Shown: one piece after another, positions 20,981-21,727 of the stretch
Numbering within the stretch: the stretch's first letter is position 1
How the letters are laid out: each line of letters starts with the position of its first letter
Assembly: GCF_048593235.1 (NCBI RefSeq)
Contig: NC_133618.1
Coordinates: forward strand, 476,291,294 to 476,355,293
DNA: 64,000 nucleotides
Reading direction: 5' to 3'
From: Sminthopsis crassicaudata
Lineage: Eukaryota
Notes under the pieces: model-generated
Seen by the model: the letters and a program-made list of their open reading frames with translations, nothing else
The model's database searches: none
What the model was told of the DNA's origin: nothing
Position numbers and translations under genes: made by a program

Positions 20981-21115
20981 ATATGCTTAGCTCTGGGGAG
21001 CAAGTGTAGTGGGATCTTGAGCTCAGGAGTCACTTCTGATTTACTGGAAGCTGAAGTGTAATATTTCACCAGCAAAGCTGGTAGTCTCTTTAAGAACCAA
21101 TGGAAACACCTGCCT
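20981..21115 (+). repeat. Left arm of a 135-bp inverted repeat
   Basis: Ungapped match to the reverse complement of 21593-21727; 14 mismatches in 135 by manual alignment. Confidence 0.97.
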
Positions 21116-21592
21116 ATCCTACCTTGTCCTGTGTTGTATTAAGACAACGAGAGAAAAACATTCATTCACAATTTCTAGTTTATACTTCTATAATTTACTG
21201 GGTTATAGGTGTCAGATTAGAATATTTTCTTCTCTATGTATTGTGAGCGTCTCCTACATTAAATTGTAAACTCTTAGAGGGCAGAGACTCTACCTCTGTC
21301 TTTGGAGCATCCCCCAAATAGTGCCTAATAGTCAGTGGAAGCCTCACTAAAGCATTGGAATAAACATGTTTGTGATCTAAAATCAAAGAAAATGAATTCA
21401 TTTACTTACATCTTCAACAGAGCTACTAAGCCTTAAAAAGAAGTAAGGAAAGAAAGAGCAGGCTTCATATACATTGTAAAGCCTTATTTCTACATTGTGA
21501 AAATAGATTGGGCATCCACCTCCCTTTCCTGTTTAAATCCTTACTCACCTGTGGGAAGAGGATTAGCCCCCGTGAACAGAGCAAACAACTAC

Positions 21593-21727
21593 AGGCAGGT
21601 GTTTCCATTGGTTATTAAAGAGACCAGGGCCTGTGCTGGTGAAATATTACACCTCAGCCTCCAGTAAGTCAGGAGTGACTCCTGAGCTCAAGACCCCACT
21701 ATACTCGCTCCCCAGAGCTAAGCATAT
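21593..21727 (-). repeat. Right arm of a 135-bp inverted repeat
   Basis: Partner of 20981-21115; contains the internal palindrome tcaggagt-g-actcctga (21669-21685). Confidence 0.97.

What the first reader, a model, noticed from the sequence alone, without database searches (positions are those of the whole stretch)
20981..21727. 135-bp ungapped inverted repeat of non-transposon sequence with asymmetric decay
Seen: 20981-21115 matches the reverse complement of 21593-21727 at 121/135 positions with no indels, around a 477-bp spacer. The arms match no SINE, LINE or MITE I recognise. Of 9 transitions, 8 leave A/T in the left arm and G/C in the right, including a CpG kept only on the right. Six of the 14 mismatches cluster in 21075-21083. 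Inference: the spacer holds an ancient L2 tail (about 21230-21360), so this is more likely a local inverted duplication by template switching than a young MITE, with the right arm as the constrained parent. If transcribed it would fold into a long dsRNA stem (ADAR substrate, endo-siRNA or hairpin precursor); as DNA it could promote inversion of the spacer. Alternative: both arms end in TA|tgcttag, which would fit a TA-TSD Tc1/mariner-type element with long TIRs.
Basis: partly seen in the sequence, partly recalled or inferred. Interest (0 to 1): 0.75.

Follow-up and report, generated by a model that had tools for sequence, protein, structure and literature searches.

The report
Isolated 135-bp inverted repeat, origin unresolved
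A real pair of 135-base inverted copies about 10% apart sits around 477 bases of ordinary marsupial DNA; it is most likely a decaying scar of a local copying error or an uncatalogued small transposon, and nothing suggests it has a function.

Summary
20981-21115 matches the reverse complement of 21593-21727 at 121/135 with no indels (BLAST E 1e-47). The homology stops sharply on all four sides. It is the only repeat of this class in the window.

The arms have no other copy in the 64 kb. They match no CORE-SINE copy here, no Rfam family, no Pfam domain and no OC1_Das consensus word.

The origin could not be settled.

Evidence from the window itself splits:
- For a local inverted duplication (0.45): the spacer has background composition and carries an ancient L2/MIR-type fragment, an ATAT microhomology sits at the outer junction next to a (GATA)n/(TA)n tract, and the GC-rich block runs past the right arm only.
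- For a TA-targeting long-TIR non-autonomous transposon (0.33): TA flanks both ends, the arms are sharply bounded and unusually GC-rich, and the total length is 741 bp.

Arm divergence (K2P 0.067-0.113) dates the event to about 10-17 My.

The "asymmetric decay" is weak (8:1, p=0.039; 6:1, p=0.125 without the mismatch cluster). Neither transcript strand gains wobble pairs, so nothing points to a selected RNA hairpin.

The finding is ordinary until a genome BLAST says otherwise.

The parts
20981..21115 (.). Left arm of the inverted repeat (GC 0.44, no CpG). It is the candidate derived copy.
   Evidence: 121/135 to the reverse complement of the right arm. Sharply bounded.
21593..21727 (.). Right arm of the inverted repeat (GC 0.50, one CpG). 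It is the candidate parent copy.
   Evidence: Its GC lies in the top 2.5% of 135-bp windows in this window.
21116..21592 (.). 477-bp spacer. Its GC of 0.369 equals the window mean of 0.367. It has no coding remnant.
   Evidence: no Pfam family at E below 0.1 in the ORFs; no Rfam match.
21243..21390 (+). Ancient interspersed-repeat fragment in the spacer (L2/MIR-type 3' end). The limits are approximate.
   Evidence: The motif at 21250-21289 is shared with 63457-63494, 4008-4027 and 8256-8280. The family name is from memory.
21070..21086 (.). Mismatch cluster (six of the 14 differences). The left arm reads as a perfect small hairpin, ACCAGC-AAA-GCTGGT. The right arm reads ACCAG-CACAGGCC-CTGGT. 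This is probably one multi-nucleotide event.
   Evidence: Read directly from the alignment. Four of the six changes equal the reverse complement of the adjacent ACCAGC. Which arm changed is not resolvable without an outgroup.
20982..20983 (.). TA immediately outside TGCTTAG on the left. It is either a possible TA target-site duplication or part of an ATAT microhomology.
21725..21726 (.). TA immediately outside CTAAGCA on the right.
20914..20980 (.). (GATA)n followed by a short (TA)n-like tract that abuts the left arm. It is a candidate fork-stalling or hairpin-prone site, and also a rich source of TA target sites.
   Evidence: (GATA array at 20914-20965).
21500..21592 (.). GC-rich stretch (0.43-0.53) that continues the right arm inward. 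The left arm has no counterpart.

Best explanation
The repeat is a local inverted duplication made in one replication or repair event about 10-17 million years ago.

Proposed mechanism (inferred):
1. A nascent strand left its template at the (GATA)n/(TA)n tract ending near 20980.
2. It re-annealed through the palindromic ATAT at 21724-21727 on the complementary strand.
3. It copied about 131-135 bases of the resident sequence 21593-21727 backwards, then returned to the original template at 21116.

[quoted passage not shown] A micro-inversion with a staggered break would leave the same picture.

Since then both arms have drifted neutrally. The 21075-21083 cluster is a second, small quasi-palindrome event. 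The structure is most likely inert.

Shown: the repeat, its sharp limits, the make-up of the spacer and the junction letters. Inferred: the mechanism, which arm is the parent, and the date.
For: - The spacer is ordinary resident DNA. Its GC of 0.369 matches the window's 0.367. It carries a fragment of an ancient multi-copy repeat that is much older than arms only 10% apart.
- There is no transposase remnant.
- There is no IR-DR substructure or internal direct repeat in the arms.
- No direct repeat longer than TA flanks the repeat. A neighbouring hAT MITE, whose family burst has been dated to about 17 My, still has a perfect 8-bp duplication, CTCTAAAC.
- The outer junction is a 4-nt palindrome, ATAT, next to a microsatellite.
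- The GC-rich block extends about 90 bp inward of the right arm but not of the left arm. That is expected if the right arm is part of a larger resident block and the left arm is an inserted copy.
- Published surveys of the dasyurid genome singled out only OC1_Das (hAT) as likely recently mobilized among the DNA transposons studied (PMC4408412; PMC3621081). The arms share no 11-mer with the OC1_Das consensus.
- The four-point model describes such inverted copies (PMC5453318).
Against: - Genome copy number and orthologous loci were not seen, so 'only two copies' is shown for 64 kb only.
- TA flanks both ends, exactly as for a Tc1/mariner-type insertion.
- The arms are much GC-richer than local DNA. 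The right arm is in the top 2.5% of windows, which looks more like imported sequence than a random local piece.
- Known short template switches copy tens of bases from within tens of bases. This one copies 135 bases from about 600-750 bases away.
- There is no microhomology at the inner junction.
Confidence: 0.45

Rival explanations
1. A non-autonomous cut-and-paste DNA transposon of 741 bp (20984-21724) with about 131-bp terminal inverted repeats. It inserted at a TA (Tc1/mariner-type target duplication) and belongs to a family not yet catalogued for dasyurids. Its interior would be captured or filler host DNA.
For: - TA sits on both flanks, directly outside TGCTTAG...CTAAGCA.
- The arms are sharply bounded on both sides.
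- Arm GC is 0.44 and 0.50 against 0.37 locally.
- The size is typical of MITE-like elements.
- Per-arm divergence of about 3-5.6% falls in the same age class as the OC1_Das burst, 5.4% from consensus and about 17 My. DNA transposons were therefore mobile in this lineage at that time.
- The scan's first readers flagged other young-looking MITEs in this genome (unchecked).
Against: - There is no second copy in 64 kb. This is a weak argument: it only caps the family at roughly 150,000 copies.
- The interior holds an ancient L2/MIR-type fragment and has background composition. That is unusual for a deletion derivative.
- There is no transposase remnant.
- There are no internal direct repeats of the IR-DR kind seen in long-TIR Tc1 elements.
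- The terminal letters TGCTTAG do not resemble the Tc1, pogo or mariner ends I recall (from memory only).
- TA in a TA-rich microsatellite context is cheap by chance.
Confidence: 0.33
2. Two independent insertions, in opposite orientation and 477 bp apart, of the same short interspersed element or LTR fragment.
For: - The arms begin TG and end CA at their outer ends. The right arm holds an ATTAAA about 107 nt before that end, which is loosely LTR-like (read; a resemblance only).
- The arms are compositionally foreign to the locus.
Against: - Both arms cover exactly the same 135 bases, with no further homology. Independent truncated insertions would not do this.
- Neither arm has its own terminal repeats, poly(A) or flanking duplication.
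- No primer-binding-site-like sequence follows either outer end (read).
- No other copy lies in 64 kb, so the family cannot be abundant enough to make such a close pair likely.
- There is no similarity to the CORE-SINE copies of this window.
- None of the arm 11-mers occurs in the supplements of the dasyurid ERV paper.
Confidence: 0.07
3. Whatever its origin, the repeat is a working hairpin-RNA locus (a source of endo-siRNA or an ADAR substrate), or a DNA switch that inverts the spacer, and is kept by selection.
For: If transcribed, either strand folds into a nearly complete 135-bp stem: MFE -331.8 kcal/mol against -190 for shuffles, z -18. One RNA run (blood metatranscriptome) holds 7% of the words of 20700-22000, at an unknown place within it.
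Against: - The stem follows automatically from the repeat.
- The 14 differences give 4 G-U and 10 true mismatches on the + transcript, and 5 G-U and 9 true mismatches on the - transcript. Neither strand's pairing has been protected, and a two-copy comparison cannot show compensatory change.
- No Rfam family matches.
- The runs labelled 'RNA?' have contig totals and word shares that fit low-coverage DNA (my inference).
Confidence: 0.03

Closest known systems
Template-switch mutations under the four-point model, type 1-4-3-2 (Loytynoja and Goldman 2017, PMC5453318), and their larger relatives FoSTeS/MMBIR
   Same: A reverse-complement copy of nearby sequence is placed next to unchanged DNA, which creates a new inverted repeat and a potential hairpin. 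Microhomology is possible at a switch point (ATAT here). A second small cluster, 21075-21083, looks like classic quasi-palindrome correction.
   Different: Published short events copy tens of bases from within tens of bases. This one copies 135 bases from 600-750 bases away, with no loss of sequence that can be seen here. No outgroup was available to show the state before the event.
Tc1/mariner-type MITEs and long-TIR Tc1-like elements (TA target duplication)
   Same: TA lies on both flanks, the inverted termini are sharply bounded, and the overall size is under 800 bp.
   Different: No family was demonstrated. The arms have no IR-DR repeats and there is no transposase remnant. The interior contains an ancient L2/MIR-type fragment. 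The terminal letters are unlike the ends I recall for Tc1, pogo or mariner (from memory).
OC1_Das_NA hAT MITEs of dasyurids (Gilbert et al. 2013, PMC3621081)
   Same: The age class is the same: 5.4% from consensus for OC1_Das against about 3-5.6% per arm here. A copy lies 2.7 kb away, at 24472-24659.
   Different: OC1 has short TIRs and an 8-bp duplication. The neighbouring copy still shows a perfect CTCTAAAC. The repeat studied here has no 8-bp duplication and shares no 11-mer with the OC1_Das consensus.
Inverted SINE pairs (Alu-type dsRNA and ADAR substrates)
   Same: If transcribed it would form a stem of more than 100 bp around a loop of a few hundred bases.
   Different: The arms are not a SINE. 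They have no similarity to the CORE-SINE copies in this window and no other copy in 64 kb.

Membership tests
Tc1/mariner-type non-autonomous transposon (MITE) | TA target-site duplication directly flanking the terminal inverted repeats | tested here: met
   TA at 20982-20983 and at 21725-21726, outside TGCTTAG...CTAAGCA. The left flank is a TA-rich microsatellite, so the value of this as evidence is low.
Tc1/mariner-type non-autonomous transposon (MITE) | A dispersed family: many copies elsewhere in the genome with the same termini | not testable with these tools
   No marsupial genome is searchable here. Within 64 kb there are no further copies. The public contig collections gave one chance 20-mer match in a bacterial-type contig and nothing else.
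Tc1/mariner-type non-autonomous transposon (MITE) | Relation to an autonomous element: DDE transposase remnant or shared termini | tested here: not met
   No Pfam family at E below 0.1 in any ORF of the element. No IR-DR direct repeats in the arms. A non-autonomous copy need not carry coding remnants, so this lowers the claim but does not exclude it.
hAT, Mutator, PIF/Harbinger or piggyBac element | Direct target duplication of 8 bp, 9 bp, TWA or TTAA at the ends of the inverted repeat | tested here: not met
   The flanks share no direct repeat beyond TA. As a control, the OC1 hAT MITE at 24472-24659 keeps a perfect 8-bp duplication.
Template-switch inverted duplication (four-point model type 1-4-3-2) | One arm is a reverse-complement copy of nearby resident sequence, and the spacer is resident DNA | tested here: met
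   121/135 reverse-complement identity. The spacer has background GC and an ancient repeat fragment.
Template-switch inverted duplication (four-point model type 1-4-3-2) | An ancestral state with only one arm in an outgroup, and only two copies genome-wide | not testable with these tools
Template-switch inverted duplication (four-point model type 1-4-3-2) | Microhomology at the switch points | tested here: inconclusive
   ATAT (4 nt, palindromic) at the outer junction and none at the inner junction. The same ATAT is also read as a TA duplication plus one chance match.
Inverted pair of a known SINE, LINE or LTR | Arms similar to a multi-copy interspersed repeat | tested here: not met
   No hit in the window by BLAST or nhmmer. 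No similarity to four CORE-SINE copies. No Dfam or Repbase library was available, so low-copy families remain possible.
Known structured RNA or miRNA precursor (Rfam) | A match to a covariance model | tested here: not met
   Nothing within 20981-21727 at E up to 1 in the 5-kb scan. Only noise, E 4.7-9.8, in the 811-base scan.

The most novel reading that the evidence does not exclude
A single long-range template switch created, in one step, a 135-bp hairpin-RNA locus in a dasyurid ancestor, and that locus is transcribed and processed into endo-siRNAs. This would be a large-scale counterpart of the de novo miRNA births ascribed to short template switches. A less exotic alternative, also not excluded (about 0.3), is that it is the first seen copy of an undescribed TA-targeting long-TIR transposon family that entered dasyurids in the same era as OC1.
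Probability: 0.03. Interest if true: 0.65.

Novelty: new member of a known kind. Interest (0 to 1): 0.25.

Why it matters
If it is a template-switch scar, it is a clean and datable example showing that replication template switching can copy more than 100 bases from several hundred bases away in a mammalian germ line. That would create, in one step, a long potential dsRNA stem and a recombination-prone palindrome. If it is a transposon, it points to a second, uncatalogued DNA-transposon family active in dasyurids around the time of the OC1 invasion. Either way this one locus looks neutral, so its value is as an example and not as a functional element.

Tried and rejected
**Read laying.** As a result I saw no read-level check of the arrangement, no depth-based copy number, no orthologues and no RNA evidence. 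After that I kept 21849-21910 out of every search and masked it in scripts. One exception was not my choice: the search of earlier findings with scope 'relatives' widened my range to 19481-23227 by itself.

**Protein route to marsupial contigs.** Ten ORFs of this window were looked up exactly and none is in the protein collection. The collection therefore seems not to hold non-genic ORFs of this genome. I ran no further search on arm translations, because a blank would have meant nothing.

**Exact 20-mer of the arm in public contig collections.** There was one hit in a metagenome contig with 52% GC and no further similarity, which is chance. Genome contigs and viral contigs gave none.

**Earlier findings.** Searches by sequence, relatives and words found nothing on this element.

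**SINE origin.** I suspected a B-box-like stretch in the arm. Alignment to four CORE-SINE copies of the window scored no better than shuffles, so I rejected it.

**LTR origin.** The outer ends read TG...CA and there is an ATTAAA. Against that, there is no 4-6-bp duplication, no primer-binding site and no longer LTR-like homology, and none of the arm 11-mers occurs in the supplements of the dasyurid ERV paper. I judge it unlikely.

**OC1 origin.** None of the arm 11-mers occurs in the OC1_Das consensus files, so I rejected it.

**Exon origin.** One frame is open through both arms. However, 14 base changes give 9 amino-acid changes and there is no Pfam hit, so there is no sign of coding.

**Gene context.** The letters beside the N runs show no splice signals, and the nine ORFs of 112-133 aa that were scanned have no Pfam domain. 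The gene context stays unknown. The N runs were not filled or looked up.

Full report
**1.

The stretch 20981-21115 pairs with the reverse complement of 21593-21727 at 121 of 135 positions with no gaps. BLAST scores the pair at 89.6% identity, E 1e-47 against the window.

The 14 differences are 9 transitions and 5 transversions. Eight transitions carry A/T on the left and G/C on the right. Six differences lie within 21075-21083. The only CpG of either arm is on the right, at 21706-21707. Both outer ends read TA|TGCTTAG.

The ungapped extension to 169 nt that the repeat finder reports is chance. Local alignment of the sequence just inside and just outside the arms scores no better than shuffles. 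The repeat is therefore sharply bounded on all four sides.

Only one other inverted pair in the window passed the same scan, and it is far weaker: 86 nt at 77%, at 26662/28506.

Runs from three different studies of the same species hold 0.79-0.89 of the sampled 31-mers of 20700-22000. An assembly artefact is therefore unlikely, although I never saw reads spanning the structure.

**2. What the arms are not.**

- They have no further copy in the 64 kb, by BLAST with word size 7 or by an nhmmer profile of the two arms. That caps any family at very roughly 150,000 copies per genome and rules out the abundant SINE and LINE classes.
- They do not resemble four copies of the marsupial CORE-SINE found in this window.
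- They match no Rfam family.
- They contain no Pfam domain in any ORF.
- They have no internal direct repeats of the IR-DR type.
- They share no 11-mer with the published OC1_Das consensus or with the supplements of the dasyurid ERV paper.
- One reading frame is open through both arms, but 14 base changes give 9 amino-acid changes. Nothing suggests coding.

**3. What surrounds them.**

The spacer's GC of 0.369 equals the window mean of 0.367. Around 21250-21289 it carries a motif that recurs in at least three other places of the window.

The left arm abuts a (GATA)n array and a short TA-rich tract. Further left lies a pentamer minisatellite around a masked N run. The N run was not touched.

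The arms are GC-rich at 0.44 and 0.50. The right arm is in the top 2.5% of 135-bp windows here. On the right the GC-rich block continues about 90 bp inward of the arm. On the left GC stays near 0.42 for only about 40 bp inward and then drops to 0.25-0.33.

**4. Age.**

The K2P distance between the arms is 0.113. It is 0.067 if the 21075-21083 cluster is set aside as one event. With the marsupial neutral rate used by Gilbert et al. (3.21e-9 per site per year, PMC3621081), this gives about 10-17.5 My.

That is the same age class as the OC1_Das burst, whose copies are 5.4% from consensus, about 17 My. An OC1-type MITE lies 2.7 kb away at 24472-24659 and still has a perfect 8-bp target duplication, CTCTAAAC. 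Target duplications of that age should therefore still be readable. Around the repeat studied here there is none longer than TA. That excludes hAT, Mutator, PIF and piggyBac types and leaves only a TA-type element.

**5. Weighing the two serious explanations.**

For a local inverted duplication:
- The spacer looks like resident DNA and holds an ancient repeat.
- There is no transposase remnant.
- The outer junction is the palindrome ATAT. A nascent strand leaving a TA tract could use it to re-anneal on the opposite strand.
- The GC-rich block runs past the right arm only, as expected if the right arm is part of a larger resident block and the left arm is an inserted copy.
- Published surveys singled out only the hAT family OC1_Das as likely recently mobilized in this lineage, among the DNA transposons studied (PMC4408412).

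For a TA-targeting long-TIR element:
- TA lies on both flanks.
- The limits are sharp.
- The composition of the arms looks foreign to the locus.
- The 741-bp size is typical.

I judge these arguments to nearly cancel. I put the duplication at 0.45 and the transposon at 0.33. Independent double insertion gets 0.07, because both arms cover exactly the same 135 bases and neither has hallmarks of its own.

In the four-point model of Loytynoja and Goldman (PMC5453318) the duplication would be a type 1-4-3-2 event. It would be roughly ten times longer in both copy length and distance than the short events that paper treats. A micro-inversion with a staggered break would leave the same structure.

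**6.

*Asymmetric decay.* The 8:1 split gives a two-sided binomial p of 0.039. Two of those transitions lie in the mismatch cluster, and without them the split is 6:1, p=0.125. This is a hint and not evidence of constraint. An error-prone copying step at birth would explain it as well as 'a constrained parent' would.

*The cluster.* The left arm reads ACCAGC-AAA-GCTGGT, a perfect small hairpin, where the right arm reads ACCAG-CACAGGCC-CTGGT. Four of the six changes equal the reverse complement of the adjacent ACCAGC. This is the signature of quasi-palindrome correction, so the cluster is probably a single event. The direction cannot be told without an outgroup.

*The dsRNA.* A 761-nt transcript would fold with the full stem: -331.8 kcal/mol, z -18. 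That follows from the repeat itself. The differences give 4 G-U and 10 true mismatches on the + transcript, and 5 G-U and 9 true mismatches on the - transcript. Pairing has not been protected on either strand.

I obtained no transcription evidence. The runs guessed as 'RNA?' have contig totals and word shares that fit low-coverage DNA. The one certain RNA run holds 7% of the words, at an unknown place.

**7. What could not be done, and rules kept.**

The protein collection does not hold ORFs of this window. The contig collections gave only a chance hit.

One look-up in earlier findings widened its own range over them. The N runs were neither filled nor looked up. Their borders show no splice signals, so the gene context is unknown.

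**8. Verdict.**

This is a real, isolated, moderately old inverted repeat of non-SINE sequence. It is most likely a neutral scar of a local inverted duplication. An uncatalogued TA-type long-TIR transposon is a close second. Nothing supports a function. A single genome-wide BLAST of one arm and one orthologue alignment would settle the question.

Noticed in passing
window 24472-24659: An intact hAT MITE of the OC1/OposCharlie1 type. Its TIRs read CAGGGGTTCTCAAACT and CAGTGGTCCTCAAACT (the second is the reverse complement of its right end), and it is flanked by a perfect 8-bp target duplication, CTCTAAAC. I used it here as a control showing that target duplications of the OC1 era are still readable.
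   Followed up: partly
window 21115-21137 versus 20092-20114: The first 23 bases of the spacer are 87% reverse-complementary to a unit of the GGACA/GGATA pentamer minisatellite that lies about 1 kb upstream (20019-20114 and 20557-20698, around a masked N run). The E-value within the window is only about 0.15-0.3, so it may be chance. If it is real, it would fit an inverted spacer.
   Followed up: partly
window 26662-26747 and 28506-28591: A second, weaker inverted pair: 86 nt, 77% complementary, 1758 nt apart. It was not examined.
   Followed up: no
window 12624-12640, 18073-18089, 48319-48335, 61312-61328: Four places on the minus strand match a B-box-like 17-mer (GGACCTGAGTTCAAATC) with 2-3 mismatches, against 0.28 expected by chance. 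Three read as CORE-SINE copies. One, near 12500-12760, ends in a long poly(A) and looks comparatively intact. The one at 18073-18089 looks more MIR-like.
   Followed up: partly
window 19666-19730 and 21997-22063: TG/CA-rich simple sequence gives weak sub-threshold Rfam matches to mir-297 and mir-3149 (25-30 bits against gathering scores of 90-100). These are low-complexity artefacts, not miRNA genes.
   Followed up: no
They lie outside the finding and were left alone afterwards.
   Followed up: no
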